Source of the DNA: Octopus sinensis
Taxonomy: Eukaryota
DNA: 29,704 bases
Direction of reading: 5' to 3'
NCBI RefSeq assembly: GCF_006345805.1
Contig: NW_021832893.1
Location: forward strand, 1 to 29,704
Both the position numbers and the translations under genes were made by a program. Shown one piece after another: positions 1 to 26,483 of the stretch (its first letter is position 1; every line of letters starts with the position of its first letter). The notes beneath the pieces were generated by a model. It worked only from the letters and a program-made list of their open reading frames with translations. It did not search any database and was not told the DNA's origin.

Positions 1-1245
<1,245 letters not shown>

Positions 1246-1432: not shown

Positions 1433-1865
<433 letters not shown>

Positions 1866-3188
1866 ATGAATGCTCCTTATAAAATATGCTGTCTTCCTCT
1901 AGGTGATGAGAATATCAAAGACACTTCTGAATGTAGAGATTTCCTTCATGTCAACATGTTGTGATATTCTGAAATAGGAAAAGAAGCAGTAAGTTAAAAC
2001 TGGATAGTTGACCAACATAAGTAATTAAACATTGCAGAATTTACATCACTACCATTGTCATGCATTTACTGTCCATGCTTGCATAAGTAGATTGAGTTGG
2101 AAGGTGTTAGAAGCTAATGGGAATGAGCTATAGCCAAAACGAAAATATAGTGGGCATAACATGACCAGAGTAGTGAGTTGATGCCATCCAGAATTTCACA
2201 GAGCAAGTTGCCACAAGTGAAATGGGCTGTTATGAAGTGATCAGAGTTAATGATAAAGAAGCATTGTTACTCGTCTGCCGCCTTTCCGCTAACTAATTAA
2301 AACTCCCACTTCTCTTCATGGATACTGAATTGCCCTCTAGGATCCAAACGAGCCCACCCTGATGGGCTGAAGAATGACATAGCAGACACATGCTATGTGT
2401 CACAACTAAATAGCTTTCCTGACTTGCTACAATATTAAATACTGGCAGAATCACTAAGATGCCGGATTAATTGCTTAACAGCATTTCGTTCGTAAATAGC
2501 TTTGTCAAACTAGAGATTATAGCAATCAGGAATGGGAGTGTGTCTGTGCATTGTTTATTTCTCTTCAATCAGGTACACACTGTGAGGGTGAGTACGATTG
2601 ATCATTTGAGCATCCAGATGCCCCTCCCACCTAACCACGAGTCCCTTCTCTGAAGACCAGCTTGCTAGCTAGCCCACAGTCTGTCAAAACTTGGTGCCTC
2701 AAACGTCTTTCCGTTGAAAAAAAAAATTATTATTATTATCATCATCAACATTAATATTTTATAAACCACAAAAAGTAGAGTCGGCTCATCGAGCAAAACC
2801 CTGACTCCAAATACATCTTACAATTTCATGAGTCCTTCATTAGAAAAAGGGACAACGGTAATTATTCTCTTTCCTCTCGCAGGTGTTACGACCACTCACG
2901 GAAACGGAGACACACGTCTTTGTGAGCAGGAAGGATCTCCTCAGTAGAATCAATAGCTGCAAACCCTCTGAAGACCTCACAGGTTGTGTCCGAGTAGAAT
3001 GGATATAATTCGCCTCTACCCATCTATAGACAGATTTTCTTGTGGGGTGCTTGTAAAGACAAGAACATTACATACGTTGGGGAGACATCTAGAAGCATTG
3101 CAGGGGGATGAAATAAAAATTAGAGGCAGCATGACCACATAACCAGTCCTCCATACTCTACCAAAGATGCTAATATATATATATAGTA

Positions 3189-3300
3189 GGTGCTAGTCGC
3201 GAAGACTGAACCCGGTTTGGGCATCCGCGCTAGCCAGTCGTAGGTAGTCGAACCTACAGCGACTTGCATATGCAAATGAGCTGATTGGCGCAACATTGCA
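3189..3300. mobile_element. Single terminus of a MITE-like element related to 10844-11223
   Basis: Gapless alignment at ~65% identity over ~75 nt with the left terminal repeat of 10844-11223. No second terminus found. Confidence 0.5.
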
Positions 3301-3945
3301 AAAACTTAGTTACTAGCGAGCCCCTACTGAAGCTTAGGAAATATTTTTCAACGATATACGGTGTATATTATTTTAAAGACAATTGCGTTTTTTTTTTCGT
3401 TACAAAGCAATTAGAAGCACTGAAAAAAAAGCAAAACAACCTTAAGGACAGTCAAACATTTTTTTTTCAAAGTAGACCACTACAGGTGACAATTCACTTG
3501 TGTTAACTTTGAATAGCTACGGCAAACTGCAGCATGAAAATTCAAAAGAAAGTTTTAAAAAATTGGCTTAACCCCTCCCCAACAAGGTAATTTTACTGTA
3601 GGCATCAACAGGAAAACCGGTTACTGGTGACAAGCCAACAACGTGGGGTCAGAATTTAGTTGCCAGCCAGATAGAGGAAGGGTAGTACAGTGACAGATCA
3701 CAGACGAAGATAACACTAATTGCCTCGTATGAAATGGTTCAGTGTCAACTTATGAGGCTCCTGTCAACGACCAAGTCACTTCAATGTAAACTTATAGTAA
3801 CCAAATTTCCCCCACGTAGAAATGAAACATTTCTATGAAGTAAAGGGTTACTTTACGTCTGGTTAAAAATAAACTCCTTTGATCAGGTCCGCACGACCAG
3901 GGCAGTGTTGGGACACTTCAGTTTAGAAGTTATTAATTAAGACGA

Positions 3946-4100
3946 GGTACGTTCTGAGTTCAAATTCCGTCGAGGCTGACTTTAACCTTTTATTACTTCT
4001 GGGTCGATAAATTAAGTACCAGTTAAATATTGGAGCCGTTGTAATCGACTATTGACCGCCCTCAAATTTCAGGTCTTGTATCTAAAGAAGAAAATATTAT
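3946..4100 (+). mobile_element. 5'-truncated tRNA-derived SINE (family 2, OK/Meta-like) with 15-bp TSD
   Basis: GTTCAAATTCC B-box-like motif and GGGTCGATAAATTAAGTACCAG core. TSD TATTAWTTAAGACGA at 3931-3945 and 4095-4109. Empty site at 11899-11913. Confidence 0.8.
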
Positions 4101-4433
4101 TTAAGACGAATTAATATATTTTCCTTATATTTTTATGTTTTCGCTTCGAAATGATTACTGTAACATCGAAAGATTCACAGAATTCTACGATTTACAATAT
4201 TATTATTAGTATTATTATCATCATTAAAGCCTTAAAGTAAATCTTTGTCAACTTACCCTGTTCAGATAGAAACTGTGAGTCAGTTAATTAAGCACCTTAA
4301 TTAATAATTGGAGCTTGGTAGTGTAGAAGTTATTTCCCTTTGTATGATTGTATTTCTTGAATTCTCCAATAGATGTCTCTACTGACTGGTTGGATTCGTT
4401 CCAGCATTTTTGTCTGTTCCCTTATTTTAACTA

Positions 4434-4824
4434 CCAGTAGTGTAACCCGGCGTTGCTCGGGTTTGTTTCGACCCTTTAGAATTGGAATTTTTGAAAAGTA
4501 AAGATGTTGCATAATGTAGCTTCTTATTCTCTTTAAGTAAACATTTCTCTGTTTGAAATACACCGAGAAATGTCGACACAACAGTAAAAAAATCGTAAAA
4601 TATAGTGATTTTCATAGAAAAAGAGGCACCTTTTTGATGTAAACTATTTTTGGTGTTAACATGGTCTGATTTGAATTTTATCTTCTACGGAATGAAGAGC
4701 AAGCCATCTTCTATCATACTCTCAATTTTGGTCAACTTGCTCCGCAGGGTCTTGGAGGAGATAGTGTTAGTTGAAGGCTACCAAACCTGCCATACACAGA
4801 CAACTTCAGCTTTATACACAGAGA
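4434..4824 (-). mobile_element. Non-autonomous Helitron
   Basis: On the minus strand: A|TC 5' end, CCCGAGCAACGCCGGG 3' hairpin and CTGG|T end. Mirror of 20978-21373. Confidence 0.75.
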
Positions 4825-5070
4825 TTTCACTTTCAATTCTTTTTTTTTTAATTTTCACCAGGTCATTTTAAGAAAGTTTACTCATATATTCTGTTACAAA
4901 ATACCGGTCCCCTGATACAGGAACCATGCAATTGATTATTGGTGTAATTTATAGAGATTTTCATCTCAAATTGCCCACTGCCGGCCTCAATTTCATTATC
5001 TTCACTGTAGAATATGTTATTTCCTAAATCTATTTCATCATCGTCAACTTCAATGTCGTCACCGTAAGAC

Positions 5071-5739
5071 ATACTCTTTTACTTATTTCAGTCATGTGAC
5101 TGAGGCCATGCTGGAACACCGCCTTTAGTCGAGCAAATCGACCCCGGGACTAATTCTTTGTAAGCCTAGCACTTATTCTATCAGACACTTTTGTCGAACC
5201 GCTAAGATACAGGGACGTAAGCACACCAGCATCAGTTGTCAAGCATTTTTGGGGGGACAAACACAGACACACACACATATATATATATCAAAATAAGCAA
5301 CAAGAATGACTACGGAAATTTGGTACAATAGTTTTACGCTACATCATTTTATTAAATATTGTAAGTATTACAACAGTTTTAAAATGTAGAGCACTCATCA
5401 GCCAATTATAGAAACGATTGCACCAAATTACCAGAGTCATTCTTGTGCTTATTTTGATTATAATCACCCCACAATTTTTTATGGATAACACCATACAAAA
5501 TTCTGGTGCATCTAAATTAAGTACCATATTCATTGGAATCTAAATTTTTACTGAACTTATGTATATATATATATATATATGTATATACATATATTTCCAT
5601 CTCCCAAATCTACACACATGGCTTTAGTCGGCCCGAGGCTATAGTAGAAGACACTTGGCCAAGATGCCACACAGTGGGACTGAACCCGGAATCATGTGGC
5701 TGGTAAGCAAGCTACTTACCACACAGCCACTCCTTAGCC
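5071..5739 (-). mobile_element. tRNA-derived SINE family 1 (OR-like) with an insertion in its central (TA)n
   Basis: Head GGCTAAGGAGTGGCTGTGTGGTAAG and tail AGTAAAAGAGT. Homologous to 7003-7384, 15554-16336, 17284-17666 and 19632-20750. Confidence 0.85.
5287..5458. mobile_element. 172-bp foldback (MITE-like) element
   Basis: ATCAAAATAAGCAACAAGAATGACT at the left end pairs with AGTCATTCTTGTGCTTATTTTGAT at the right end. Imperfect inverted repeat of ~50 bp. Confidence 0.55.
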
Positions 5740-5916
5740 TATAATAATACTAACTTTTTCTATAAACATGCATTCACATCAGGGATTACCTACAACCAAA
5801 CAGTCAAAAAATGCAGACAGGTTTGTTTGTGTGGTAAGGAACTTTCTTTCCAGCCTCATGGTTTGGAGTTCAATCCCAATGCAGAGCACATTGAGCAAGT
5901 GCTTTCAGCTATACCT

Positions 5917-6136
5917 ATTTCTTTATTACCCACAAGGGGCTAAACATAGCGGGGACAAACATAGGTATTAAGTCGATTACATCAACCCTAGTGCATAACT
6001 GGTCCTTAATTTATCGATCCCGAAAGGATGAAGAGCAAAGTTGAACTGTGCAGAATTTGAACTCACAATGTAAGGGCAGCCAAAATACCGCTAAACATTT
6101 CGCCCGACGTGCTAACGATTCTGCCAGCTCGCCGCC
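5917..6136 (-). mobile_element. SINE family 2 with 13-bp TSD
   Basis: TSD TTCAGCTATACCT at 5904-5916 and 6137-6149. Head GGCGGCGAGCTGGCAG. It sits at the end of an older family-1 SINE head (~5820-5905). Confidence 0.85.
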
Positions 6137-6164
6137 TTCAGCTATACCTCGCTTTAACCAAAGT

Positions 6165-6460
6165 CATCATCATTATAATCATTTAATGTCCGTTGTCCAA
6201 GTTGACATGGTTCGGACGGCTTGACCATGACTGGGGGTGATTTGGCATGGTTTCTACTGCTGGATGACCTTATCTAACACCAACCACTCTGCTTTTATGT
6301 GACCTCAGAGTCTGACAGAACTACGAATTTACTTGGCTTCATGGCCTTCACAAGCAAGATATAATACAAAAGGTCTGAGTTATTCATCATTGTCTCTGTG
6401 AGGCCAAACACTTGAAAGGTCCTTCCACACACCATCGACATTAGCTACTTTGCCGCCGTT
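6165..6460 (-). mobile_element. Old RTE-clade LINE 3' end
   Basis: (ATG)n tail, 3' UTR similar to 19821-19960, and a residual FGLTETMMNNSDLL resembling the RTE C-terminus. Mirror at 18750-19025. Confidence 0.55.
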
Positions 6461-6879
6461 CAAGAATTGGAACTGGAGATCGCCATTTCCAATGACTTCA
6501 AGGGCCACCTCCCAGTGGAATCAGGCGTCAACAAAGAGCCCTCGTCTACAAGACGACCAAATTTTTTTGTTTTTTCCAAGGTCTGGGCTCTCCCTCCCCT
6601 AAGCCCTAGACCATCGCCTAATCACCCTTACCCGGAGAAAGAAATACAAAAGGCCTTACCTGTTGACCTAGGTGGGATGAGCAATCACTGTCAAGAAATA
6701 AACATGTCCTTGCATGCTGCTGTCTCTCCTTGAACTTCCTGCCCATGCATGCCCCGTGGCTGTTCCTCCGGCCCCTGCAGTCTTCACTTCTGTCTACCTC
6801 ATCTGCAATCCTCTCCACCAACACCACATAGCTCATCACAGCCCATAACACACCACACTATACATGCTTTCTTCCTCAA

Positions 6880-7720
6880 AATTTTAATGTCTGTGTTCCA
6901 TACAGGCATATGTTGGATAGTTGACCAGAGCTGACAAAGCCATGAGTTGCACCAGTTTCCTTGTCTGATTTGGCTTTTCTACAGCAGAATGCATTTCCTA
7001 ATACTCTTACTCTTGACTCTTTTACTTGTTTCAGTCATTTACTGTGGCCATGCTGGGCACCACCTTTTAGTCGAGCAAATCGACACCAGGACTTATTCTT
7101 TGTAAGCCTAGTACTTATTCTATCAGTCTCCTTTGCTGAACCACTAAGTAATGGGGAGGTGAACGCACCAGCATCGGTTGTCAAGCGATGTTGAGAGGAC
7201 AAACACATATATATATATATATGACGGGCTTCTTTCAGTTTCCGTCTACTGAATCCACTCACAAGGCTTTGGTCAGCCCGAGGCTATAGTAGAAGACACT
7301 TGCCCAAGGTGCCACGCAGGGGGACTGAATCCGGAACCGTGTGGTTGGTACGAAAGCTACTTACCACACAGTCACTCCTATGCCTATGTCAACCCTTTTT
7401 ACAGAGAGCAACTGGGTGTTTGTTTTTATGGGACACCATCACCAGTGCTGCTGAGTTGGCACTAGTACCTGTGCTTATAATATGAGCCCCTTATCCATGC
7501 ATTTTACGTGTCACCACCATCAATGCTTCTTTTTGTGTCATCTCATCACCAGTGCTTGTGATATGGGTCCAGCATCAGCACAATTGCCTTTTTCCTGGGA
7601 CCCTCACCAGCGAATTCTATGTGACAACAAAACTGACATGGTCCTCAAGGACCTTGCAAGACAAAATAGCTGAAAACTGGCAGGGTAGTATTGAAGGGAC
7701 GTCACCTTGTGCCAGTTGAC
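6880..7720 (-). mobile_element. Old RTE-like 3' UTR interrupted by a SINE
   Basis: TTTAATGTC...GTTGGA...GTCTGATTTGGC...TTTCTAC pattern shared with the younger RTE copy. Mirror at ~16930-17790. Confidence 0.45.
7003..7384 (-). mobile_element. SINE family 1, full length
   Basis: Near-identical reverse complement of 17284-17666, with head, central (TA)n and AAGAGT tail. Confidence 0.9.
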
Positions 7721-8151
7721 AGGTTTAAGGTACAAAGGGAACAGGGTCCAGATATAGTGCAAAAAAACAAGCACAAAATAAATATTTTATTCATTATTCT
7801 TTATTAAGAAATTCCTATAACTGATGAAAGGAAAAGCCTGTGTTTTAGCAGACCAATTAGTGTTAATTATTGTTATGACTTAATAAATTTTGACATGAGA
7901 CAGTAACACGTCTCTGTGAATACCACATGTTTATGCATGTGGCTTTTTCGAGAGAATCATTTGCCACACGTCACACTGACATGGCTACTCTCATGTAGGG
8001 ATTCGTTTCATGGACAGTTAAGTTAGGGTCTATGAGAGAATGCTTTAACACAGACACGACCATTACATAGGTTGGTGTCTGGTATGAACATTTTCATGTG
8101 TAGTTACAACACACCATTTGCAAAAAATGAATTACAACAACTAATGCGGGA

Positions 8152-8478
8152 TTATGGCTTCTCTACTGTATGTGTATGTGTGTGTCTATTCAACTGATGC
8201 CTTTGAGAAAATGACTCACCACAGATCTCACAGTGATAAGGTTTCTCACCAGTATGAATGCAATTGTAAGTAACCAAATGACTATTACGAGAGAATGATT
8301 TACCACAATTATCACACTGATAAGGTTTCTCACCAGTATGAATGCGATTGTGAATAACCAATTGACTATTATGAGAGAATGATTTACCACAGATATCACA
8401 ATGATAAGGTTTCTCTCCTGTATGAATGTGTTTGTGATTAGTCAACTGCCTATTACAAGAGAATGATTTGGCACAGAT
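8152..8478 (-). pseudogene. Out-of-frame distal fingers of gene B
   Basis: Four more finger units (CNRQLTNH with Cys->Phe, HNSQLVIH, RNSHLVTY, QRHQLNRH) after a ~11-nt deletion near 8500. Confidence 0.8.
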
Positions 8479-8479
8479 A

Positions 8480-9229
8480 TCAAAATGATAGGGTTTCTCT
8501 CTGCTTATGTTTAGTTAAAACGTTCTTTTTAGAGAATGATTTACCACAGATATCGCAATGATATGGTCTTTCTCCTGTATGAACACGTTTGTGCTTAGTC
8601 AATTGACTCTTAGAAGGGAATAACTTACCACAAATATCACAATGATATGGCTTCTCTCCTGTATGAGTAAGTTTGTGCCTAGTCAAGTGGTTACTTAGAG
8701 AGAATGATTTACCACAGATATCGCAATGATATGGTCTCTCTCCTGTATGAATGCGATTGTGATCAACCAAATTACTATTATGAGAGAATGATTTACCACA
8801 GATATGACAATGATATGGTTTCTCTCCTGTATGTGTAAGTTTGTGGCTACTCAACTGACTACATTGTGAGAATGATTTACCACAGATATCGCAAAGATAT
8901 GGCCTCTCTCCTGTATGAATGCGATTGTGAGTAACCAAACTACTATTACGAGAGAATGATTTACCACAGATCTCACAATGATATGGTTTCTCTCCTGTAT
9001 GTGTACGTATGTGATCAGTCAAGTGAGTGCTTCCAGAGAATGATTTACCACAGATCTCACAATGATATTGCTTCTTTCCCGTATGTGTACGTTTGTGTCT
9101 AACAATGTCACTACTGTAAGAAAATGATTTTCCACAGATATTCCAGTGATATGGCTTTTCTTCTTTGTCAAGATTTTCTGATTCAGTTAAATTATTCATT
9201 TTGAGAGAATTACTTATCATACACTTCAC
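8480..9229 (-). CDS. C2H2 zinc-finger protein, copy B (6 intact fingers plus degenerate first and last)
   Basis: 249-aa ORF of CxxC-x12-H-x3-H units with TGEKPY/TGERPY linkers and a short leader [17 protein letters not shown]. Inferred intron 12039-9496. AATAAA motifs at 7805-7800 and 7791-7786. Confidence 0.85.
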
Positions 9230-10264
9230 AATGATAAAGTGTTTTTCATTTCCATGAATACATTTCTGTTCACTTTTGTCACTTCATTCAGATAACAATT
9301 TAATGCAATGTTTCTTCCATACATTCCACAGAATGAAAAATATTCCGCTGTCTCTTGTTATAGACTGTATTTATATACAGAGGTAGATTTATTCATGAAT
9401 GCTCCTTACAAATATACTGTCTTCCTTTAGGTGATGAGAATATCAAAGACACTTCTGAATAGAGAGATTTCCTTAACGTCAAATGTTGTGATATTCTGAA
9501 ATAGGAAAATAAGCAGTAAGATAAAACTGGATTGTTGCCAACATAAGTAATTCAACATTACAGATTTTATATCACTACCATTGTCATGCATTTACTGTCC
9601 ATGCTTGCTAAGTAGATTGAGTTGGAAGGGGTGTTAGAAGCTAATGGGAATGGAGCTAGCAAAACGATAATATAGTGGGCATAACATGACCAGAGTAGTG
9701 AGTTGATGCCATCCAGAATTTCACAGAGCAAAGTTGCCACAAGTGAAATGGGCTGTTTATGAAGTGATCAGAGTTAATGATAAAGAAGCATTGTTACTTG
9801 TCTGCCGCCTTTCCGCTAACTAATTAAAACTCCCACTTCTCTTCATTGGCACTGAATTGCCCTCTAGGATCCATACGTGCCCACCCTGATGGGCTGGAGA
9901 ATGTCATAGCAGAACAGTGCTATGGTGTGACAACTAAAATAGCTTTCCTGACTTGCTACAATATTAAATACTGCAGAATCACTAAGATGCCGGATTAATT
10001 GCTTAACAGCATTTCGTTCGTAATAGCTTTGTCAAACTAGAGATAAAAGCAATCAGGAATGGGAGTGTGTCTGTGCATTGTTTATTCTCTTCAATCAGGT
10101 ACACACTGTGAGGGCGAGTACGATCAATCATTTGAGCATCCAGATGCCCCTCCCACCTAACCACAATCCCTTCTCTGAACACCAGATTGCTAGCTAGCCC
10201 ACAGTGAAGGTCCCTCTTTATATTTCGTCTGTCATAAGTTGGTGCCCCAAACGTCTTTCCTTTC

Positions 10265-10385
10265 AAAGCATGACTTCCACTGAGGTCGACTTTCATCCTT
10301 TCGAAGTAAATAAAATAAGCAGTAGAGCACTCGAGTCCCTGAAATTAACTCGTCCCCTTTCTACAAATTTCAGGTTTTGTAATTA
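10265..10385 (+). mobile_element. SINE family 2 fragment in the intron of B
   Basis: GAGGTCGACTTTCATCCTTTCG core. Absent from the paralogous position in A' (~2710). Confidence 0.6.
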
Positions 10386-12995: not shown

Positions 12996-13009
12996 TTGTC
13001 CCATTCTAT

Positions 13010-13228: not shown

Positions 13229-13233
13229 CAAGA

Positions 13234-13678: not shown

Positions 13679-13809
13679 CGCCAAGATCCTCATGATCGTA
13701 ATAAAGATTCCATTTCATAGTAGTTCTCTAATTCTCTCATAGATGGCTCTACTGACTAGTGGCTTCCTTTCAGTTTCTCTCTTAGTTTCATTCTGTTAAT
13801 ATCTGTATT

Positions 13810-14330: not shown

Positions 14331-14696
14331 AATATCACAACATGTTGACATGAAGGAAATCTCTACATTCAGAAGTGTCTTTGATATTCTCATCACCTAA
14401 AGGAAAACAGTATATTTATACGGAGCATTCATGAATAAGTCTACCTCTGTATATAAATACAGTCTATAACAAGGAACAGCGGAATATTTTTCTTTCTCTG
14501 GAATGTGGAGGAGGTGATTGCTTTCCTGGTGAATTAAAGTTGGATAAATTTACAAAGGAGTTGACAATTTCCATCTGCTGTTTTAGATATCGAGTAAGAT
14601 CGTGGATGGAAGAAAGATTGCATTAAATAATTCTCTGCATGAAGTGACACGACGGAACAAAAACATATTCATAGAAAGGAAAAACACATTATCTTT

Positions 14697-15356
14697 GTGA
14701 TATGTATGATAAGTAATTCTCTCATAATGAATAATTTAAGTAAACCAGAAATCCCCAACACAGAGGATAAGGTATATAATTGTAATATCTGTGGTAAATC
14801 CTTCCTTCAGTATCGTTACTTAACTTATCACCAACGTACACATACAGGAGAGAAGCCATATCACTGTGATATCTGTGGTAAATCATTCTCTTATAATTGT
14901 CATTTGGTTACTCACAAACGCGTTCACACGGGAGAGAGACCCTATTATTGTGATATCTGTGGTAAATCATTCTGTGAACGTACAGTTTTGACGAAACATA
15001 AGAAGATTCATACTGGTGAAAAACCATATCAGTGTGATATCTGTGGTAAATCATACTCTCGTAATAGTCAATTGGTTAGTCACAATCGCACTCATACAGG
15101 AGAAAGACCATTTAATTGTGATATCTGTGGTAAATCATTCTGTGAACGTAAAGTTTTAACTAACCATAAGAAGATTCATACTGGTGATAAACCATATCAT
15201 TGTGATATCTGTGGTAAATCATTCTCTCAGAGTGGTAGTGTCACTACACACAAACGTACACATACAGGAGAAAAACCTTATCATTGTGATATCTGTGGTA
15301 AATCATTTTCTCAAGGTAATCACTTGACTAATCACAAACTTACACATACATGGTAG
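14697..15356 (+). CDS. C2H2 zinc-finger protein, copy C (7 intact fingers)
   Basis: 219-aa ORF with helices QYRYLTY, YNCHLVT, ERTVLTK, RNSQLVS, ERKVLTN, QSGSVTT and QGNHLTN. The real start may be the ATG at 14703 or 14727. Confidence 0.88.
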   Translation: MICMISNSLIMNNLSKPEIPNTEDKVYNCNICGKSFLQYRYLTYHQRTHTGEKPYHCDICGKSFSYNCHLVTHKRVHTGERPYYCDICGKSFCERTVLTKHKKIHTGEKPYQCDICGKSYSRNSQLVSHNRTHTGERPFNCDICGKSFCERKVLTNHKKIHTGDKPYHCDICGKSFSQSGSVTTHKRTHTGEKPYHCDICGKSFSQGNHLTNHKLTHTW

Positions 15357-15553
15357 AGACCATATCATTGTGATATCTGTGGTAAACCATTCTCTCAAAG
15401 TAGTGACTTGACTATCATTGGTAAATCATTCTCTCAAAAGAAACACTTGATTATGCACAGTCGTATATATACACGAGAGAAGCCATATCTTTGTTTTATC
15501 TGGTAAATCATTCTCTCAAAGGAGTCATTTGGCTTATCACAAACTTACACATA

Positions 15554-16336
15554 GGCGTAGGAGTGGCTGTGTGGTAAGCAGCTTGTTTACCAACTACATG
15601 GTTCCGGGTTCAGTCCCACTGCGTGGCACCTTGGGCAAGTGTCTTCTACTAGAGCCTCGGGCCGACCAAAGCCTTGTGAGTGGATTTGGTAGACGGAAAC
15701 TGAAAGACGCCCATCGTATATCTCTATCTCTATATATATAAACGGCAGTTTGTCTGTGCGTGTTTCTGTGTGTCTGTTTTCTTGTACCCTCACCCTGACC
15801 ACGGCTTTCAACCGATTCTGATGAAACTTGACACACACATAGCCCAATGTCATAATTCAAAACTATCGCAGCGAAAATTTTGAAAAGTTCCCCCAGTTCT
15901 GAAAAAAATCGATAAATTCGACATGGGGTCGACAATCAGAAACACAAACCACAGGGGACGCAACTCGACCTTTTTAACTATCAAAAAAAAATTTACCATC
16001 ATTTTTTTCCCCATTTTTTTTCTATTTGTTGGCTATAACTCTCTAAAAATGCTTTATAGTTATTTCCCTTACAAACCCGAGCAACGCCGGGCGATACTGC
16101 TAGTATGTATATATATGTGTGTGTATATTTTTGTGTGTCTGTGTTTGTCCCACCAACATTAATTGACAACCGATGCTGGTGTGTTTACATCACCGTAACT
16201 TAGTGGTTCAGCAAAAGAGACCGATAGAATCAGTACTGGGCTTACAAAGAATAAGTCCTGGGGTCGATTTACTCGACTAAAGGCGGTGCTCCAGAATGGC
16301 CAAAGTCAAATGACTCAAACAAGTAAAAGAGTATAA
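15554..16336 (+). mobile_element. SINE family 1 with a nested Helitron
   Basis: Head GGCGTAGGAGTGGCTGTGTGGTAAG, GGTTCAGTCCC B-box-like motif and AAGTAAAAGAGT tail. Confidence 0.88.
15721..16103 (+). mobile_element. Non-autonomous Helitron
   Basis: A|TC 5' end, hairpin CCCGAGCAACGCCGGG at 16076-16091, and CTAG|T 3' end, inserted in the SINE (TA)n. Confidence 0.82.
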
Positions 16337-16858
16337 GGGAGAGAAACTATATCATTGTAATTACTGTGCTAAATCATTTGCCCTTAATTGTCATTTGGTT
16401 ATCACAAACGTGTTCATACAGGAGAGAAACCTTGTCACTGTTTTGTTTATGGTAAATCTTTCTCTCAAATTAATCACTTCACTAATAAGACACATGTGGG
16501 GGAGAAGCCATAATCCTGCATTAGTTGTTGTAATTCATTTTTTGCAAATGGTGTTGTAACTACACACGAAAATGTTCATACCAGACACAACCTATGTAAT
16601 GGTCGTGTCTGTGTTAAAGCATTCTCTCATAGACCTAACTTAACTGTCCATGAACGAATCCCTACATGAGAGTAGCCATGTCAGTGTGACATGTGTGGCA
16701 CATGATTCTCTCGAAAAAGCCACATGCATAAACATGTGGCTATTCACAGAGACGTGTTACTGTCTCAATGTCAAAATTTATTAAGTCATAACAATAATTA
16801 ACACTATTTGCTCTGCTAAAACACAGGCTTTTTCCTTTCATCATTATAGGAATTTCTT

Positions 16859-16878
16859 AATAAAGAATAATGAATAAA
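16859..16878 (+). terminator. Putative polyadenylation signals of gene C
   Basis: Two AATAAA followed by a T/GT-rich tract, conserved in mirror image in B. Confidence 0.45.
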
Positions 16879-17283
16879 ATATTTATTTTGTGCTTGTTTT
16901 TTTGCACTATATCTGGACCCTGTTCCCTTTGTACCTTAAACCTGTCAACTGGCACAAGGTGACGTCCCTTCAATACTACCCTGCCAGTTTTCAGCTATTT
17001 TGTCTTGCAAGGTCCTTGAGGACCATGTCAGTTTTGTTGTCACATAGAATTCGCTGGTGAGGGTCCCAGGAAAAAGGCAATTGTGCTGCTGCTGGACCCA
17101 TATCACAAGCACTGGTGATGGTGATGAGATGACACAAAAAGAAGCATTGATGGTGGTGACACGTAAAATGCACGGATAAGGGGCTCATATTATAAGCACA
17201 GGTACTAGTGCCAACTCAGCAGCACTGGTGATGGTGTCCCATAAAAACAAACACCCAGTGCTCTCTGTAAAAGGGTTGACATA

Positions 17284-17666
17284 GGCATAGGAGTGACTGT
17301 GTGGTAAGTAGCTTTCGTACCAACCACACGGTTCCGGATTCAGTCCCCCTGCGTGGCACCTTGGGCAAGTGTCTTCTACTATAGCCTCGGGCTGACCAAA
17401 GCCTTGTGAGTGGATTCAGTAGACGGAAACTGAAAGAAGCCCGTCATATATATATATATATGTGTTTGTCCTCTCAACATCGCTTGACAACCGATGCTGG
17501 TGCGTTCACCTCCCCATTACTTAGTGGTTCAGCAAAGGAGACTGATAGAATAAGTACTAGGCTTACAAAGAATAAGTCCTGGTGTCGATTTGCTCGACTA
17601 AAAGGTGGTGCTCCAGCATGGCCACAGTAAATGACTGAAACAAGTAAAAGAGTCAAGAGTAAGAGT
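17284..17666 (+). mobile_element. SINE family 1, full length
   Basis: Mirror of 7003-7384. The empty site is seen at ~24055-24070. Confidence 0.9.
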
Positions 17667-18036
17667 ATTAGGAAATGCATTCTGCTGTAGAAAAGCCAAA
17701 TCAGACAAGGGAAACTGGTGCAACTCATGGCTTTGTCAGCTCTGGTCAACCTATCCAACATATGCCTGTATGGAACACAGACATTAAATTTTGAGGAAGA
17801 AAGCATGTATAGTGTGGTGTTATGGGCTGTGATGAGCTATGTGGTGTTGGTGGAGAGGATTGCAGATGAGGTAGACAGAAGTGAAGACTGCAGGGGCCGG
17901 AGGAACAGCCACGGGGCATGCATGGGCAGGAAGTTCAAGGAGAGACAGCAGCGTGCAAGGACATGTTCATTTCTTGACAGTGATTGCTCATCCCGCCTAG
18001 GTCAACAGGTAAGGCCTTTTGTATTTCTTTCTCCGG

Positions 18037-18800
18037 TAAGGGTGATTAGGTGATGGTCTAGGGCTTAGGGGCGGGAGAGCCCAGACCTTGGAAAAAACAA
18101 AAAAACTTTGGTTCTTTTGTTGTATTTGAGGAATCTTTGTTGACGCCTGATACCACTGGGAGGTGGCCCTCTTAGTCGCTGGAACTGGAGATCCCCAGGT
18201 CCAAATTCTTGAACTGTTGGGGTTAGTGTTGGTGTTGGTGGTGATGGCAGAGAGAGGTGGCAGCAGTGACAGGAACAGCAATGGTGGCAGTAGCAGCGAA
18301 GGTGATGCCAGCAGTGGCGATGGTGAAAGCGGCAGTGCTTGTTGGTGCTGGTGTTGCTAAGCAACAAGACGGGTAAAGGTGATTAGGTGATGGTCTAGGG
18401 CTTAGGGTCGGGAGCCCCAGACCTTGGAAAAAAAGGGATTTTTGTTGACGCCTGACACCCATGGGAGGTGGCCCTCGAAGTCGTTGGAAATGAGATCTCC
18501 AGGTCCAATTCTTGAACGGCGGCAAAGTAGCTAATGTCGATGGTGTGTGGAAGGACCTTTCAAGTGTTTGACCTAAGGGTGATTAGGTGATGGTCTAGGG
18601 CTTAGGGGCGGGAGACCCCAGACCTTGGAAAAAACAAAAAAACTTTGGTCGTCTTGTAGTCGAGGGATCTTTGTTGACTCCTGACACCACTGGGAGGTGG
18701 CCCTCGAAGTCGCTTGAAAAGGAGATCTCCAGGTCCAATTCTTGAAAGGCGGCAAAGTAGCTGATGTCGATGGTGTGTGGAAGGACCTTTCAAGTGTTTG
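18037..18800 (+). repeat. Three copies of a ~175-225-bp unit starting with a G-rich motif
   Basis: Units start at ~18037, ~18377 and ~18574 with GGTGATTAGGTGATGGTCTAGGGCTTAGGG. A low-complexity spacer lies at 18213-18376. There is one inverted copy at ~6410-6630. Confidence 0.85.
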
Positions 18801-19052
18801 GCCTCACAGAGACAATGATGAATAACTCAGACCTTTTGCATTATATCTTGCTTGTGAAAGATATCAAACCAAGTAAAATCAGAGTGGCTGGTGTTAGATA
18901 AGATCATCCAGCAGTAGAAACCATGCCAAATCAGACCCAGTCTGGAGCAGCCTTCCAGTCCTGGTCAAACCGTCTGAACCATGTCAACTTGGACAACGGA
19001 CATTAAGTGAGGATAATGATGATGACTTTGGTTAAAGCGAGGTATAGCTGAA

Positions 19053-19454
19053 GGTGGCGAGCTGGCAGAATCGTCAGCACGTCAGGCGAAATGCTTAGCG
19101 GTATTTTGGCTGCCGTTACATTCTGAGTTCAAATTCCACCGAGGCCGACTTTGCCTCTCCTCCTTTCGAGGTTGATTAAATAAGTACCAGTTATGCACTG
19201 GGGTCGATGTAATCAACTTAATCCATTTGTCTGTCCTTGTTTTTCCTCTGTGTTTAACCCCTTGTGGGTAGTAAAGTAATAGGTATTTCATCTGTCGTTA
19301 TGTTATGAGTTCAAATTCCGCCCAGGTCGACTTTGCCTTTCATCCTTTCGGGGTCGATAAATTAAGTACCAGTTACGCACTGGGGTCGATGTAATCGACT
19401 TAATACCTATGTTTGTCCCGTCTATGTTTAGCCCCTTGTGGGTTATAAAGAAAT
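19053..19454 (+). mobile_element. SINE family 2 tandem dimer within one TSD
   Basis: TSD AGGTATAGCTGAA at 19040-19052 and 19455-19467. Full unit to ~19290, then a 5'-truncated unit from ~19298. Confidence 0.85.
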
Positions 19455-19631
19455 AGGTATAGCTGAAGGCACTTGCTCAATGTGCTCTGCATTGGGATTG
19501 AACCCTAAACCATGAGGTTGGAAAGAAAGTTCCTTACCACACAAACAACCCTGTCTGCATTTTTTGACTGTTTGGTTGTAGGTAATCCCTGATGTGAATG
19601 CATGTTCATAGAAAAAGCTATTATTGTTATA

Positions 19632-19790
19632 GGCTAAGGAGTGGCTGTGTGGTAAGTAGCTTGCTTACCAACCACATGGTTCCGGGTTCAGTCCCACTAC
19701 ATAACACCTACTATAGCCTTGGGCTGACTAAAGCCTTGTGAGTGGATTTGGTAGACAGAAAATGAAAGAAGCCCGTCGTATATATGTATG

Positions 19791-19821
<31 letters not shown>

Positions 19822-20750
19822 CATCATCGTTTAATGTCCGCTTTCCATGCTAGCATTGGTTGGACGGTGCAACTGAGGTCTGGGAAGCCAGAAGGCTGCA
19901 CCAGGCCCAGTCTGATCTGGCAGTGTTTCTACGGCTGGATGCCCTTCCTAACGCCAACCACTCCATGAGTGTAGTGGGTGCTTTTTACATGCCAGATGAG
20001 GCTGGTGAACGGCCACACTCTGCCACCGGCACGGAGGCCAGGCGAGGCTGGCAATGGCCACAATCGGATGGTGTTTGTTATGTGCCACCGGCACGGAGGC
20101 CAGGTGAGGCTGACAATGGCCACAATCGGATGGTGTTTGTTATGTGCCACCGGCACGGAGGCCAGTCGATGCGGCACTGGCTATGGCCACGTTTGGATGG
20201 TTCTCTTATGTGCCACCGGAACTAGTATCACAACTTCAAATTCTATTGATGTTCATCGATTTCGATTTTCACTTGCCTCAACAGGTCTTCACAAGTAGAG
20301 TTTTGTGTCCCTAGAAGGAAGGTATGCACAGGTGGACTGACTACGTCCCAGGTAGAGGCCACGGGTTTCGGCCTCACTTGTCCTGCCGGGTCTTCTCACG
20401 CACATCATACTTCCAAAGGTCTTGGTCTCTGGTCATTTCCCCGGTGAGACTTAATGAGCGAAGTTTGTGCTTCACCACTTCGTCCAGGTTTTCATGGGTC
20501 CACCTCTTCCACAGGTTCCCTCAACCACTAGGGTGTATATGTATGTTTGTGTGTCTGTGTTTGTCCCCACAACATTGCTTGACAACTGATGGTGGTGTGT
20601 TTACATCCCCGTAACATAGCGGTTCAGCAAAAGTGACTGATAGAATAAGTGCTAGGCTTACAAAGAATTAGTCCCGGGATCGATTTGCTCGACTAAAGGC
20701 GGTGCTCCAGCATGGCCACAGCCACATGACTGATACAAGTAAAAGAGTAT
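19632..20750 (+). mobile_element. SINE family 1 split by an RTE insertion
   Basis: 5' half 19632-19820 and 3' half 20530-20750. Mirror of 5071-5739. Confidence 0.85.
19821..20527 (-). mobile_element. 5'-truncated RTE-clade LINE 3' end
   Basis: Minus strand reads LDEVVKHKLRSLSLTGEMTRDQDLWKYDVREKTRQ*. The 3' UTR has ~62-bp tandem repeats (GTGCCACCGGCACGGAGGCCAG...) and an (ATG)n tail. Confidence 0.72.
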
Positions 20751-20977
20751 GTCTTACAGTGACGACATAGATATAGGAAATAACATATTCTACAGTGAAG
20801 ATAATGAAATTGAGGCCGGCATTAGGCAATTTGAGACGAAAATCTCTATAAATTACACCAATAACCAATTGCATGGTTCCTGTATCTGGGGACCGGTATT
20901 TTGTAACAGAATATATTAGTAAACTTTCTTAAAATGACCAGGTGAAAATTAAAAAAAAAACAGAATTGAAAGTGAAA

Positions 20978-21373
20978 TCTCTATGTGTATAAAGCTGAAG
21001 TTGTCTGTGTGTGGCAGGTTTGGTAGCCTTCAACTAACACTATCTCCTCCGAGACCCTGCAGTGCAAGATGACCAAAATTGAGAGTATGATAGAAGAAGG
21101 CTTGCTCTTCATTCCGTAGAAGATAAAATTCAAATCGGACTATGTTAACACCAAAATTATTTACATCAAAAAGGTGCTTCTTTTTTTTCCTATGAAAATC
21201 CCTATATTTTACGATTTTTTTACTGTTGTGTCGACATTTCTCGGTGTATTTCAACCAGAGAAATGTTTACTTAAAGAGAATAAGAAGCTACATTATGCAA
21301 CATCTTTACTTTTCAAAAATTCCAATTCTAAAGGGTCGAAACAAACCCGAGCAACGCCGGGTTACACTGCTGG
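20978..21373 (+). mobile_element. Non-autonomous Helitron
   Basis: A|TCTCTATGTGTATAAAGCTG 5' end, the same 3' hairpin as 15721-16103, and CTGG|T end. Confidence 0.75.
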
Positions 21374-21723
21374 TAGTTAATATAAGGGAACAGACTAAAG
21401 TGCTGGAACGAATCCAAGCAGTCAGTAGAGACATCTATTGGAGAATTCAAGAAATACAATCATATAAAGGGAAGTAACTTCTACACTACATCAACCAAGC
21501 TCCATTATTAATTAAGGTGCTTAATTAGCGATCGCTGACTCGCAGTTTGGATCTGAACAGGGTAAGTTGACAAAGATTTACTTTAAGGCTTTAATGATGA
21601 TAATAATACTAATAATAATATTGTAAATCATAGAATTCTGTGAATCTTTCGATGTTACAATAATTATTTCGAAGCGAAAACATAAAAATATAAGGAAAAT
21701 ATATTAATTCGTCTTAAATAATA

Positions 21724-21872
21724 TTTTCTTCTTTAGATACAAGACCTGAAATTTGAGGGAGGTCAATAGTCGATTACATCGGCTCCAATATTTAACTGGT
21801 ATTTAATTTATCGACCCAGAAGGAATAAAAGGTTAAAGTCAGCCTCGACGGAATTTGAACTCAGAACGTACC
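21724..21872 (-). mobile_element. SINE family 2 fragment with TSD, same insertion as 3946-4100
   Basis: TSD TCGTCTTAAWTAATA at 21709-21723 and 21873-21887. Confidence 0.8.
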
Positions 21873-22094
21873 TCGTCTTAATTAATAACTTCCAAACTGA
21901 AATGTTGGTTTGTTGTTTCTGAAAACCTATGATCGGATGTTAGATGTGATATAGAGGAAATTTATTTGGGCATTCCGTAACAAACTTTTTTTTTTTTACA
22001 TATGGACTTGCGGGAACTTTTTGAAGTAATGAGAGCGAAAGAGACTAAGAGAAAGCGATTTTATGACGAGGGAAGTTCTTTTGAAGTTACCGTC

Positions 22095-22894
22095 CAGGGG
22101 AAGCATTGATGTACATGTGTGTGTGTGTGTTTGATGGGGTGTGGGAGACAGACAGTATGTTGTGTAGGTGAAGTGCTTCTGTTAGTGTGTGTGAAGAGAC
22201 AGAGAGAGTAATGTGTGAAAGAGAGAGATAACTGAAATTTTTTACTCAGTGTATGTGTATATGTATGTATGCATGTATTTGTGTGTGTATGTATCTATGT
22301 ATGTGTGTGTGTGTGTATCTATGTATGTGTGTGTGTGTATGTATCTATATATGTGTGTGTGTGTATGTATGTATGGCCGAGAAGAATATCTATTCATGAG
22401 AAGAATATCTCCACCTCATTTTATAACTCTCCCGTCTTTTTCTTACCAGTTCGCCATTGTCACATCAACAGAGACATTAAGGCTGCACAGTAGCAGTCGA
22501 CAAGGCATGTATAACGATTAAATAAAAAAAATTTTGTCTATATCTTCGATCACTGTCATTATTCCATTGAGTCAACCTCATTATTTTCTACATAGCAGAC
22601 CGTTACATAAATAGGCAAAGGTAATCTTTCGTTTTAACTCGAAATAATGTAAACACTGAATCGGCCATACATACACACACACATACATACACACACACAT
22701 ACATACACACACACATACATAGATACATACATATACACATACACCGAGTAAAAAATTTCAGTTATCTCTCTCTTTCACACATTACTCTCTCTGTCTCTTC
22801 ACACACACTAACACAAGCACTTCACTTACACAACATACTGTCTGTCTCCCACACCCCATCAAACACACACACATGTACATCAATGCTTCCCCTG
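22095..22894. repeat. Intronic inverted repeat made of MITE interior sequence
   Basis: 22095-22379 is the reverse complement of 22662-22894. Both match 13290-13530, and the left copy extends to ~21990. Confidence 0.85.
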
Positions 22895-23473
22895 CTATGA
22901 CGAGTAACAATGCTTCTTTATCATTAACTCTGATCACTTCATAAACAGCCCATTTCACTTGTGGCAACTTTGCTCTGTGAAATTCTGGATGGCATCAACT
23001 CACTACTCTGGTCATGTTATGCCCACTATATTATCGTTTTGGCTAGCTCCATTCCCATTAGCTTCTAACACCTTCCAACTCAATCTACTTATGCAAGCAT
23101 GGACAGTAAATGCATGACAATGGTAGTGATATAAAATCTGCAATCTTTGATTACTTATGTTGGTCAACTATCCAGTTTTATCTTACTGCTTCTTTTCCTA
23201 TTTCAGAATATCACAACATTTGACGTTAAGGAAATCTCTCCATTCAGAATTGTCTTTGATATTCTCATCAACTAAAGGAAGACAGTATATTTATAAGGAG
23301 CATTCATGAATAAGTCTACCTCTGTATATAAATACAGTCTATAACAAGGAACAGCGAAATATTTTTTCTTTCTGTGGAATGTATGGAAGAAACATTGCAT
23401 TAAATTGTTATCTGAATGAAGTGACAAAAGTGAACGGAAATGTATTCATGGAAATGAAAAACACTTTATCATT

Positions 23474-26360: not shown

Positions 26361-26483
26361 TGATGTGTTGAATTGAACCAATCGCCCCCAGTAATTGTCT
26401 TTTCTCAGGCAGCTACTCATTCGTTCCTTCTCTCTTTTTGTTGAAGTGCCATGTTACAGGGACATGGACATAGCCAATAGAAT

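What the first reader, a model, noticed from the sequence alone, without database searches (positions are those of the whole stretch)
1865..23310. ~21-kb imperfect palindrome of tandem zinc-finger genes (A'<-B<- | ->C->D)
Colinear inverted homology can be followed block by block: 3920-4320/21480-21900, 4330-5290/20530-21480, 5560-6400/18800-19800, 6400-8250/16450-18100, 1865-2230/22905-23310, plus the exon 1 and acceptor regions of B and C. A tandem gene pair was apparently mirrored head-to-head. Cephalopod C2H2 expansion in clusters is established knowledge. A palindromic amplicon architecture, comparable to Y-chromosome palindromes or breakage-fusion products, offers a specific mechanism for it that I do not recognise as described.
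Basis: partly seen in the sequence, partly recalled or inferred. Interest (0 to 1): 0.72.

Follow-up and report, generated by a model that had tools for sequence, protein, structure and literature searches.

The report
Head-to-head octopus zinc-finger gene duplication
Two ~10-kb blocks of an octopus zinc-finger gene cluster really do lie as diverged mirror images of each other, but this is an ordinary, decaying inverted segmental duplication and not a new amplification mechanism.

Summary
The reported inverted homology is real. Seven colinear blocks (E=0 for the large ones) join a left arm (1863-12102) to a right arm (13824-23310) around a 1.7-kb non-palindromic spacer. The DNA is octopod, judged from LINE protein hits. 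Each arm holds about 1.3 copies of a ~7.7-kb repeat unit: an exon-1-like element, a 5' segment with an acceptor, a C2H2 finger exon and an intergenic block.

The arms are not clean copies:
- Only ~58-62% of each arm aligns.
- Non-coding divergence is ~5%.
- Each arm has private insertions and deletions, including a SINE inside C's finger array.
- A 1.5-kb tract is ~99.4% identical, which points to recent arm-to-arm gene conversion.
- The finger exons break the mirror. B resembles D and the inverted remnant Z, while C's exon is ~20% divergent, with breakpoints at the exon edges. This is an exon cassette swap.

A' is only a 5' fragment joined to an inverted exon remnant. B, C and D are all truncated.

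A haplotype mis-join is very unlikely but could not be tested with reads. Inverted segmental duplications, including ones in zinc-finger clusters, are well known in mammals. I rate this a new member of a known kind, of low to moderate interest.

The parts
189..938 (+). Decayed LINE reverse-transcriptase fragment. It flanks the structure and is not part of the palindrome.
   Evidence: Pfam RVT_1 E=4.5e-15. Best protein hits are Octopus 'jockey-like' RT. 93% nt identity to a copy in O. vulgaris locus L001.
1263..1405 (-). Third exon-1-like element x (type I), called 'A'''. It carries the donor-like ACGGTAAGTTG (1268-1278) and an upstream TGACGTCA (1384-1391).
   Evidence: 91% direct match to 12027-12170 and 97% inverted match to 13824-13894. 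Alignment A2. Motif scans.
1436..1867 (+). Z: a decayed, inverted remnant of the 3' end of a finger exon (about 5 fingers, stop codon and 70 bp downstream). Probably what is left of A''s own exon.
   Evidence: 84-bp period on the + strand. Broken frames. Fingers 90-96% identical to B's last fingers. 83.5% inverted match to 8501-8084. Alignment A3.
1863..3172 (-). A': 5' gene segment only (p plus pL). Truncated about 70 bp before the end of the shared p segment, where it is joined to Z.
   Evidence: Direct matches to 9392-10267 (90.9%) and 10394-10850 (94.3%). Inverted match to 22899-23310 (95.2%). Breakpoint visible in alignment A1.
3913..8334 (-). d_B: intergenic block downstream of B. Its distal end (about 3913-4300) is the type II x element of unit A', with a donor-like site at 4249-4259.
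   Evidence: Colinear inverted blocks to 16338-21905. x homology. Motif.
6660..8140 (.). Left copy of the near-identical tract. Its partner is about 16525-18010. Contains a mirrored SINE copy (7016-7389 = 17281-17653).
   Evidence: 9 substitutions in 1,481 bp against a 5.15% background, binomial P=4e-23. Exact runs of 339 and 245 bp. 343 nt at 100% (I5).
8152..9323 (-). B finger exon: leader plus 8 fingers in frame (ORF 8480-9229), then an ~11-bp linker deletion, then 4 more fingers in another frame (ORF 8152-8445).
   Evidence: Pfam zf-H2C2_2 E=2.8e-63.
9321..10850 (-). B 5' segment: p (9321-9721, with the TTTCAG acceptor-like site) and pL (9721-10850, shared only with A').
11819..12170 (-). 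x_B: type I exon-1-like element with donor-like site 12032-12042 and TGACGTCA at 12149-12156. This is the inner end of the left arm.
   Evidence: 94.6% inverted match to 13824-14081. Alignment A2..
12171..13823 (.). Non-palindromic spacer. Contains repeat fragments and a MITE-like element (13234-13678) with perfect 51-bp terminal inverted repeats.
   Evidence: No inverted match symmetric about the axis. No Pfam domain in its ORF.
13824..14081 (+). x_C: type I exon-1-like element, donor-like site 13884-13894. It lacks the upstream TGACGTCA segment.
14104..14506 (+). p_C: 5' segment with the acceptor-like site. Joined 22 bp after x_C, with pL absent.
   Evidence: 94.6% to 9721-9321. Alignment A1.
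14507..15552 (+). C divergent exon cassette: a private 96-bp block (14507-14602; 99 alignment columns), the leader, 7 fingers in frame (ORF 14697-15356), an in-frame stop, then decayed fingers.
   Evidence: Leader differs from B at 32/171 and from D at 34/171 sites. Array 73.7% to B. No orthologous finger diagonal..
15553..16337 (+). Arm-specific tRNA-derived SINE (with an internal variable region) inserted in a finger linker of C. Absent from B.
   Evidence: 795 bp in C against 13 bp in B. Head and tail align with four other copies. Matches SINE copies in O. vulgaris L001 at 85-91%.
16338..21905 (+). d_C: begins with C's decayed last fingers (16338-16520), then the mirror copy of d_B. Includes right-arm-only expansions (18215-19281; 19817-20535, a dispersed repeat). 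Its distal end holds most of type II x (x_D, which runs 21504-21968), with the donor-like site at 21559-21569.
22024..22895 (.). Foldback-like repeat between x_D and p_D (arms 22095-22327 / 22894-22666, 92.7%). Related to the MITE-like element in the spacer.
22899..23382 (+). p_D: 5' segment of D. Mirror partner of A' (1863-2275).
   Evidence: 95.2% inverted match. 96.3% direct match to 14104-14506. Alignment A1.
23363..23968 (+). D finger exon: leader plus 5 fingers (ORF 23474-23968). The last His of finger 5 is lost where a deletion joins the array to the d block.
   Evidence: 91.9% inverted match to B 8754-9802. Pfam E=2e-36.
23961..24479 (+). Fragments of D's downstream block (d_D).
   Evidence: Direct matches to 16955-17034 (86%), 17667-17788 (92%) and 19062-19192 (74%).

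Best explanation
This is a real, moderately old inverted segmental duplication inside an Octopus C2H2 zinc-finger gene cluster.

The cluster is built from a ~7.7-kb repeat unit: an exon-1-like element x, a 5' segment p with an acceptor, one large finger exon, and an intergenic block d. A block of at least two tandem units (type I followed by type II) came to lie as a mirror image of itself. This gave A''<- A'<- B<- | ->C ->D, with the divergent B and C exon-1-like elements 1.85 kb apart.

Since then the arms have evolved separately, with about 5% substitutions. The later events were:
- A SINE and another repeat inserted in the right arm only.
- The pL segment was lost from C and D at different breakpoints.
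- D's array was cut by a deletion.
- B acquired an 11-bp frameshifting deletion.
- A''s exon was inverted and mostly deleted.
- One finger exon was replaced as a cassette. Most likely C's was overwritten by a distant paralogue, because homology with such a donor exists only within the exon. Alternatively B's was overwritten by a neighbour.
- A recent arm-to-arm gene conversion re-homogenised 1.5 kb just downstream of the stop codon.

Shown directly: the mirror arrangement, the divergence pattern, the mosaic breakpoints and the gene lesions. Inferred: the order of events, the direction of the exon swap, and that the original event was an inverted duplication and not an inversion.
For: - Colinear inverted blocks with E=0.
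- Five copies of the donor-like ACGGTAAGTTG: three on the - strand in the left array and two on the + strand in the right array. x-to-x spacing is 7,783 bp on the left and 7,675 bp on the right.
- x subtypes alternate I-II outward on both arms.
- d_B-d_C divergence is 0.6-5%, against 8-26% for d_C-d_D.
- Arm-specific insertions and deletions exist, including a SINE in C's array.
- Background non-coding divergence is 151/2931 = 5.15%, while the tract has 9 substitutions in 1,481 bp (P=4e-23).
- Exon mosaic: Z resembles B through the last fingers, and the pattern switches to B resembling C exactly at the stop codon. In the leader, B-D differ at 4/171 sites and B-C at 32/171.
- There are no N gaps.
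- The lesions are not homopolymer-type errors.
Against: - No independent assembly, reads or orthologous locus could be retrieved. The physical reality of the arrangement rests on internal evidence only.
- The pL segment is shared by A' and B and absent from C and D. This within-arm pattern needs two independent losses under the mirror model.
- The four-copy p segment is star-like. Informative sites number 4 for (A'C|BD), 1 for the mirror pairing and 0 for the tandem pairing, so it does not support the mirror pairing.
- Each arm is truncated at a different end: the left arm at its outer end, and the right arm apparently at its promoter-side inner end. A single clean copy event therefore does not explain both boundaries.
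Confidence: 0.6

Rival explanations
1. No inverted duplication took place. A two-unit block was duplicated in tandem (I-II-I-II, all in one orientation), and part of the array was later inverted. This produces the same head-to-head, colinear mirror picture without any palindromic amplification step.
For: - Both arms are segments of tandem arrays with the same ~7.7-kb period.
- Within-arm identity (A'-B 91-94%, C-D p 96%) is of the same order as between-arm identity (92-95%).
- Neither arm is intact at both ends.
- Inversions between inverted repeats are common in duplicated regions (PMC12330633).
Against: - Undoing a simple inversion between the 1863 junction and the axis does not restore a continuous unit. 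The missing 3' part of p_A' and its exon are not found next to the axis. This is an inference from the coordinates.
- It needs two events where an inverted duplication needs one.
- Later rearrangements could hide the original breakpoints, so this evidence is weak.
Confidence: 0.25
2. Assembly artefact: two haplotypes, or a fold-back chimeric long read, were joined in inverted orientation, so only one arm exists in the genome.
For: - Not tested with reads.
- The excess of 1-bp indels in the near-identical tract (17 indel events against 9 substitutions, compared with 8 against 61 in the distal block) suggests a long-read assembly with imperfect polishing in repeats.
Against: - About 40% of each arm does not align.
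- Non-coding divergence is 5.15%, and the finger exons differ by ~20-26% with different recognition residues.
- Each arm has private transposon insertions and deletions.
- There are no N gaps.
- The spacer is 1.7 kb of unique sequence.
- Allelic haplotypes or a fold-back read would give near-identical arms along their whole length.
Confidence: 0.05
3. An actively maintained palindrome of the sex-chromosome type. The arms are much older than 5%, and recurrent arm-to-arm gene conversion keeps the non-coding flanks similar while the finger exons escape homogenisation. This architecture would be a recurrent route of ZNF expansion in octopus.
For: - Divergence falls into three strata: 0.6%, about 5%, and about 20% in the exon.
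- The transitions at the exon edges are sharp.
- At least one recent conversion tract is present.
Against: - B's exon is close to D's and to Z's, so the exons are not simply old and unconverted.
- Downstream of the stop codon all three copies (Z, B, C) are about 92-97% alike, so C's exon alone is the outlier.
- The genes are decaying.
- Only one locus was examined.
Confidence: 0.1

Closest known systems
Inverted intrachromosomal segmental duplications in mammalian genomes, including KRAB zinc-finger clusters (PMC12330633)
   Same: Both are paralogous blocks of at least 1 kb and mostly at least 90% identity, in inverted orientation on one chromosome. Both carry zinc-finger genes, have transposons at or near block boundaries, and can undergo non-allelic recombination or conversion.
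   Different: Here the host is an octopod and the genes lack KRAB. The arms are small (~10 kb) and only 1.7 kb apart, whereas about 70% of mouse inverted SD pairs are at least 1 Mb apart. The copies are heavily decayed.
Sex-chromosome ampliconic palindromes (human Y P1-P8 and X palindromes; from my own knowledge)
   Same: Two inverted arms surround a short unique spacer, and arm-to-arm gene conversion is evident, here as one 1.5-kb tract at about 99.4%.
   Different: Overall aligned identity here is 92.5%, against >99.9% for those palindromes. About 40% of each arm cannot be aligned. The genes are disrupted. There is no sign of sustained homogenisation along the whole arm.
Fold-back / breakage-fusion-bridge inverted duplications and DUP-TRP/INV-DUP template-switch rearrangements (from my own knowledge)
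   Same: Copies lie head-to-head with a short spacer. Direct and inverted copies of one unit coexist. A second inverted junction is present at 1863-1867.
   Different: The event is old (about 5% diverged). No terminal deletion, copy-number ladder or clean microhomology junction could be shown, and the boundaries are blurred by later events.
Octopus lineage-specific C2H2 ZNF expansions in clusters (Albertin et al. 2015, as cited in PMC13218726 and PMC12513265)
   Same: Adjacent paralogous genes each have one large exon of TGEKP-linked C2H2 fingers, sit in a transposon-rich octopod region, and repeat in tandem within each arm.
   Different: The papers I could search do not analyse gene orientation or inverted duplication. 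This locus adds a head-to-head junction, a conversion tract and an exon cassette swap.

Membership tests
Inverted segmental duplication (large imperfect palindrome) | Two copies of at least 1 kb and at least 90% identity, in inverted orientation on the same molecule | tested here: met
   Blocks of 1,393 bp (92.5%) and 1,896 bp (94.1%), plus shorter blocks at 94.6-95.2%.
Inverted segmental duplication (large imperfect palindrome) | Colinear order of blocks along both arms | tested here: met
   Seven blocks form a single colinear chain.
Inverted segmental duplication (large imperfect palindrome) | Both copies physically present in the genome (spanning reads, normal depth) | not testable with these tools
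   No reads and no second assembly of the locus were available. Exact-protein look-ups were negative.
Sex-chromosome-type ampliconic palindrome | Arm-to-arm identity of about 99.9% or more over the whole arms | tested here: not met
   92.5% over aligned columns, and only 58-62% of each arm aligns.
Sex-chromosome-type ampliconic palindrome | Arm-to-arm gene conversion | tested here: inconclusive
   One 1.48-kb tract has 9 substitutions against a 5.15% background (P=4e-23). This shows a single event, not sustained homogenisation.
Sex-chromosome-type ampliconic palindrome | Intact amplified genes in the arms | tested here: not met
   B has a frameshift, C has an in-frame stop and a SINE insertion, D is truncated, and A' lacks its exon.
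Fold-back / BFB inverted duplication | Head-to-head copies with no spacer or a short one | tested here: met
   The spacer is 12103-13823, 1.72 kb.
Fold-back / BFB inverted duplication | Adjacent terminal deletion or stepwise copy-number ladder | not testable with these tools
   This needs chromosome-scale context and read depth.
Fold-back / BFB inverted duplication | Microhomology or short inverted repeat at the junction | tested here: inconclusive
   The inner boundary is fuzzy (about 13812-13824). At the outer junction the two HSPs overlap by 5 bp (1863-1867), but later rearrangement is likely there.
Octopus C2H2 ZNF cluster | Adjacent paralogous genes with arrays of C2H2 fingers joined by TGEKP-type linkers | tested here: met
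   Pfam zf-H2C2_2 and zf-C2H2 with E values down to 2.8e-63. 84-bp periodicity. Translations.
Octopus C2H2 ZNF cluster | Octopod origin | tested here: met
   The top named hits of the LINE fragment are all Octopus, at 70-88%. The SINE and LINE match O. vulgaris locus L001 at 89-93%.
Assembly artefact (haplotype mis-join or fold-back read) | Arms at allelic-level identity along their full length | tested here: not met
   5.15% non-coding divergence, ~20-26% divergence in the exons, and private insertions of 0.7-2.1 kb.

The most novel reading that the evidence does not exclude
The two arms form a long-lived palindrome whose non-coding flanks are repeatedly re-homogenised by arm-to-arm gene conversion, while the finger exons are exchanged as cassettes with other paralogues. 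Such head-to-head units would be a recurrent, genome-wide route by which octopus C2H2 genes multiply and shuffle their DNA-binding arrays.
Probability: 0.1. Interest if true: 0.55.

Novelty: new member of a known kind. Interest (0 to 1): 0.25.

Why it matters
This is a concrete, base-level example of how an octopus zinc-finger cluster turns over. It shows tandem and inverted duplication, transposon hits, deletions, non-allelic gene conversion, and replacement of a whole finger exon within otherwise mirrored flanks.

It does not establish a new amplification mechanism. It does give three things worth testing genome-wide in cephalopods: the ratio of inverted to tandem ZNF neighbours, exon-limited conversion, and recent conversion tracts.

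It also carries a practical warning. The excess of 1-bp indels in near-identical repeats suggests residual consensus errors in this assembly, which matters when calling pseudogenes.

Tried and rejected
1. **Generic homologue search with B's finger ORF.** It was swamped by vertebrate C2H2 proteins at 60% identity or less. No Octopus orthologue appeared, so it said nothing about origin.
2. **Search restricted to the family-specific leader, residues 1-42.** No candidate was found.
3. **Exact-product look-ups.** I tried the C, B and D ORFs (C with the GTG start; B and D with the ATG start) and two transposon ORFs. None is on record, so no independent assembly of the locus was available.
4. **Fetching the loci of the two best Octopus RT hits.** O. 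vulgaris locus L001 shares only dispersed repeats with the window and shows no synteny. L002 was not available to the script.
5. **tRNA and Rfam scans.** Nothing was found. The SINE head is too degenerate for ARAGORN.
6. **Tree signal in the four-copy p segment.** It has only 5 informative sites and is star-like, so it cannot decide the pairing.
7. **dN/dS for B versus D (omega 0.51, dS 0.245).** I rejected this as evidence. The finger matrix shows that the in-register alignment is not orthologous after finger 1.
8. **A target-site duplication for the SINE in C.** No clear one was found.
9. **Simple-inversion reconstruction from the 1863 junction and the axis.** It does not restore a continuous unit (inference).
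10. **Remaining ORFs of 90 aa or more in the arms and spacer.** None has a Pfam domain.
11. **Albertin et al. 2015.** The library does not hold it.

Full report

Yes. A dynamic-programming chain joins seven blocks, given here as left/right coordinates:
- 12102-11846 / 13824-14081 (94.6%)
- 9721-9321 / 14104-14506 (94.6%)
- 9323-8348 / 14603-15542 (73.7%; the finger arrays)
- 8334-6458 / 16338-18214 (94.1%)
- 6089-5558 / 19282-19816 (84.9%)
- 5285-3913 / 20536-21905 (92.5%)
- 2275-1863 / 22899-23310 (95.2%)

The left arm is 1863-12102, the right arm is 13824-23310, and the spacer is 12103-13823. E-values are 0 for the large blocks. Only 7.5% of the left arm and 24% of the right arm match dispersed repeats found in an unrelated 20.6-kb Octopus vulgaris locus. 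The symmetry is therefore locus-specific and is not caused by transposons that happen to lie in opposite orientations.

**What organism and what genes?**

The decayed reverse-transcriptase ORF at 189-938 has its best named hits in Octopus vulgaris (88%), O. bimaculoides and O. sinensis. The window's LINE and SINE match copies in an O. vulgaris contig at 89-93%. The 84-bp-period arrays are C2H2 finger exons, with Pfam zf-H2C2_2 E=2.8e-63, 4.8e-58 and 2e-36 for B, C and D. No other ORF of 90 aa or more in the arms or spacer has a Pfam domain. No tRNA or Rfam family was found.

**Anatomy of the repeat unit**

I aligned the four gene 5' regions and the copies of an element I call x. Together they show a unit made of four parts:
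- **x:** exon-1-like, with a conserved donor-like ACGGTAAGTTG.
- **p:** about 400 bp with a TTTCAG acceptor-like site. In A' and B it is preceded by a 1.1-kb segment, pL.
- **The finger exon:** one large exon that opens with a short leader containing an in-frame ATG (MISNSL…).
- **d:** a 4.4-5.5-kb intergenic block whose distal end is the next unit's x.

The donor-like motif occurs five times against 0.47 expected. Three copies are on the - strand (1268, 4249, 12032) and two on the + strand (13884, 21559). The x-to-x spacing is 7,783 bp on the left and 7,675 bp on the right. The layout is therefore A''<- A'<- B<- | ->C ->D, and the B and C donor-like sites are 1,852 bp apart.

x comes in two subtypes. 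Type I is found in B, C and A''. Type II is found in A' and D, and has a ~165-bp insert and a 5' part only about 75% similar to type I. The I-II alternation is mirrored on the two arms. Exon and splice assignments are inferences from sequence, since no transcript data were available.

- The array at 1436-1867 is on the + strand. It is a decayed remnant (Z) of the last ~5 fingers, the stop codon and 70 bp of downstream sequence of a finger exon. It is joined in inverted orientation to the truncated p segment of A' at 1863-1867. A' is therefore a wreck and not a gene copy.
- About 40% of each arm has no counterpart in the other. The unmatched pieces are:
  - 2,124 bp on the left (9722-11845, including pL) against 22 bp on the right.
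  - 795 bp on the right (15543-16337) against 13 bp on the left.
  - 1,067 bp on the right against 368 bp on the left.
  - 719 bp on the right against 272 bp on the left.
  - 1,637 bp on the left against 993 bp on the right.
- The 795-bp block is a tRNA-derived SINE sitting in a finger linker of C. Four other copies are in the window.
- The 719-bp excess lies in a dispersed repeat that is also present several times in the O. vulgaris locus.

**Divergence is strongly heterogeneous**

Outside the finger arrays and the proximal d block, the arms differ at 151 of 2,931 aligned sites, or 5.15%. From just after B's stop codon (8152) down to about 6660, only 9 substitutions occur in 1,481 bp (binomial P=4e-23), with exact runs of 339 and 245 bp. 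I interpret this as a recent arm-to-arm gene-conversion tract.

Within that tract there are 17 indel events, 13 of them of 1 bp, against 9 substitutions. The distal block has 8 indel events against 61 substitutions. That excess looks like residual long-read consensus error over essentially identical sequence. The window contains no N.

**The finger exons do not follow the mirror**

Mirror partners B and C are only 73.7% identical across the arrays. There is no orthologous finger diagonal, and the best single-finger match is 88%. In the non-repetitive leader they differ at 32/171 sites, whereas B and D differ at 4/171. Z matches B's last fingers at 90-96%.

A three-way alignment shows Z resembling B, with C different, through the last two fingers. 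Exactly at the stop codon (…GAGAAGCCATAA) the pattern flips to B resembling C, and downstream all three are about 92-97% alike. At the 5' side the switch lies between the end of p and the leader, where C has a private 96-bp block (14507-14602).

One finger exon has therefore been replaced as a cassette, with breakpoints at the exon's edges. I favour replacement of C's exon by a distant paralogue. That would explain why the tract stops where exon homology stops, and why C alone is the outlier among flanks that are otherwise about 95% similar. Replacement of B's exon by a neighbouring copy also fits, and the direction cannot be settled from this window.

**Coding state**

- **B:** 8 fingers in frame, then an ~11-bp deletion in a linker, then 4 more fingers out of frame.
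- **C:** 7 fingers, then CAT ACA TGG TAG in place of the HTGE linker, then decayed fingers, the SINE, and a decayed tail.
- **D:** its array is joined by a deletion to a point about 400 bp downstream of the position of the stop codon, losing the last His of finger 5.

These lesions are not homopolymer-type errors. All copies are shortened relative to an ancestral array of at least 12 fingers, and the locus looks like birth-and-death decay.

**Artefact or real?**

A haplotype mis-join or a fold-back chimeric read would give arms that are near-identical along their whole length. Instead the arms show 5% non-coding divergence, ~20-26% divergence in the exons, private transposon insertions and deletions of 0.7-2.1 kb, and a unique 1.7-kb spacer. 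I put the artefact at about 5%. I could not test read depth or spanning reads, and no second assembly of the locus could be retrieved.

**How did it arise?**

A'-B identity is 91-94%.

Three observations complicate this:
- pL is shared within the left arm and missing from both right-arm copies. The breakpoints differ, so two independent losses are plausible.
- The p segment is phylogenetically star-like.
- Each arm is truncated at a different end.

A tandem block duplication followed by an inversion would give the same end state. Undoing a simple inversion between the 1863 junction and the axis does not restore a continuous unit, but later rearrangements could hide that. I therefore commit to an inverted duplication of a block of at least two units (confidence about 0.6 for the whole account). 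The inversion model stands at about 0.25, and a maintained palindrome at about 0.1.

**Comparison with what is known**

Inverted segmental duplications are a standard feature of duplicated regions. In mouse GRCm39, 21,986 of 54,730 intrachromosomal SDs are inverted, and genes lying within inverted SDs include KRAB zinc-finger genes (PMC12330633).

Y-type palindromes are defined by near-perfect arm identity (from my own knowledge), which this locus fails. Fold-back or BFB products share the head-to-head layout with a short spacer, but the diagnostic terminal deletion or copy-number ladder cannot be tested here.

The cephalopod C2H2 papers I could search do not analyse gene orientation or inverted duplication (PMC12513265; PMC10547256; PMC13218726).

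**Verdict**

- Novelty: a new member of a known kind.
- Interest: 0.25.

The most interesting residue is the combination of a recent conversion tract with an exon-precise cassette swap inside otherwise mirrored flanks. That would be worth a genome-wide look.

Noticed in passing
window 6660-8140 and 16525-18010: In the near-identical tract, indel events (17, of which 13 are 1 bp) outnumber substitutions (9). The distal block has 8 indel events and 61 substitutions. This suggests residual long-read consensus errors where reads cannot be placed uniquely, and it is a caution for frameshift and pseudogene calls in this assembly.
   Followed up: partly
window 7016-7389, 17281-17653, 5073-5742, 19629-20748, 15553-16337: A tRNA-derived SINE family of about 375 bp. 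Its head is ATAGGCGTAGGAGTGGCTGTGTGGTAAG…GGTTCCGGGTTCAGTCCCACTG, and it has a central microsatellite that accepts nested insertions. Copies in an unrelated O. vulgaris locus are 89-91% identical. ARAGORN does not detect it.
   Followed up: partly
window 13234-13678 and 22024-22895: A MITE-like element with perfect 51-bp terminal inverted repeats (13234-13284 / 13628-13678) and an internal (CATA)n. A related foldback-like structure with ~230-bp arms (92.7%) lies just upstream of D's 5' segment.
   Followed up: no
window 1384-1391 and 12149-12156: A palindromic TGACGTCA (CRE-like) motif lies about 110 bp upstream of the donor-like site in the exon-1-like elements of A'' and B. It is absent from C, whose upstream homology ends at about 13824. 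A third copy is at 25452. The window has 3 matches against 0.37 expected.
   Followed up: partly
window 7900-8150 and 16520-16780: Downstream of the stop codons of B and C, the translation still shows decayed finger-like motifs (for example …CVKAFSHRPNLTVHE… and …CQCDMCG..FSRKSHMHKH…). The ancestral array was probably longer.
   Followed up: no
window 18035-18804, 19100-19460, 20021-20219: GC-rich tandem repeats (about 200-bp and 62-bp periods) inside the intergenic block. They are expanded in the right arm relative to the left and account for the 83-85% identity blocks.
   Followed up: no
window 26104-27128: About 1 kb of (TG)n and (ATGT)n microsatellite. This is the source of the long spurious C/M/Y/V-rich and H/T-rich ORFs on both strands.
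   Followed up: no
window 27985-29645 (- strand): A second LINE fragment. Its reverse-transcriptase region (RVT_1, E=4.8e-14) is split over three ORFs in different frames, so it is frameshifted and decayed.
   Followed up: no
window 1863-1867: A second inverted junction. The truncated 5' segment of A' (- strand) abuts the 3' end of a finger exon on the + strand, and the two BLAST alignments overlap by 5 bp. This suggests an in-place inversion plus deletion of A''s exon.
   Followed up: partly
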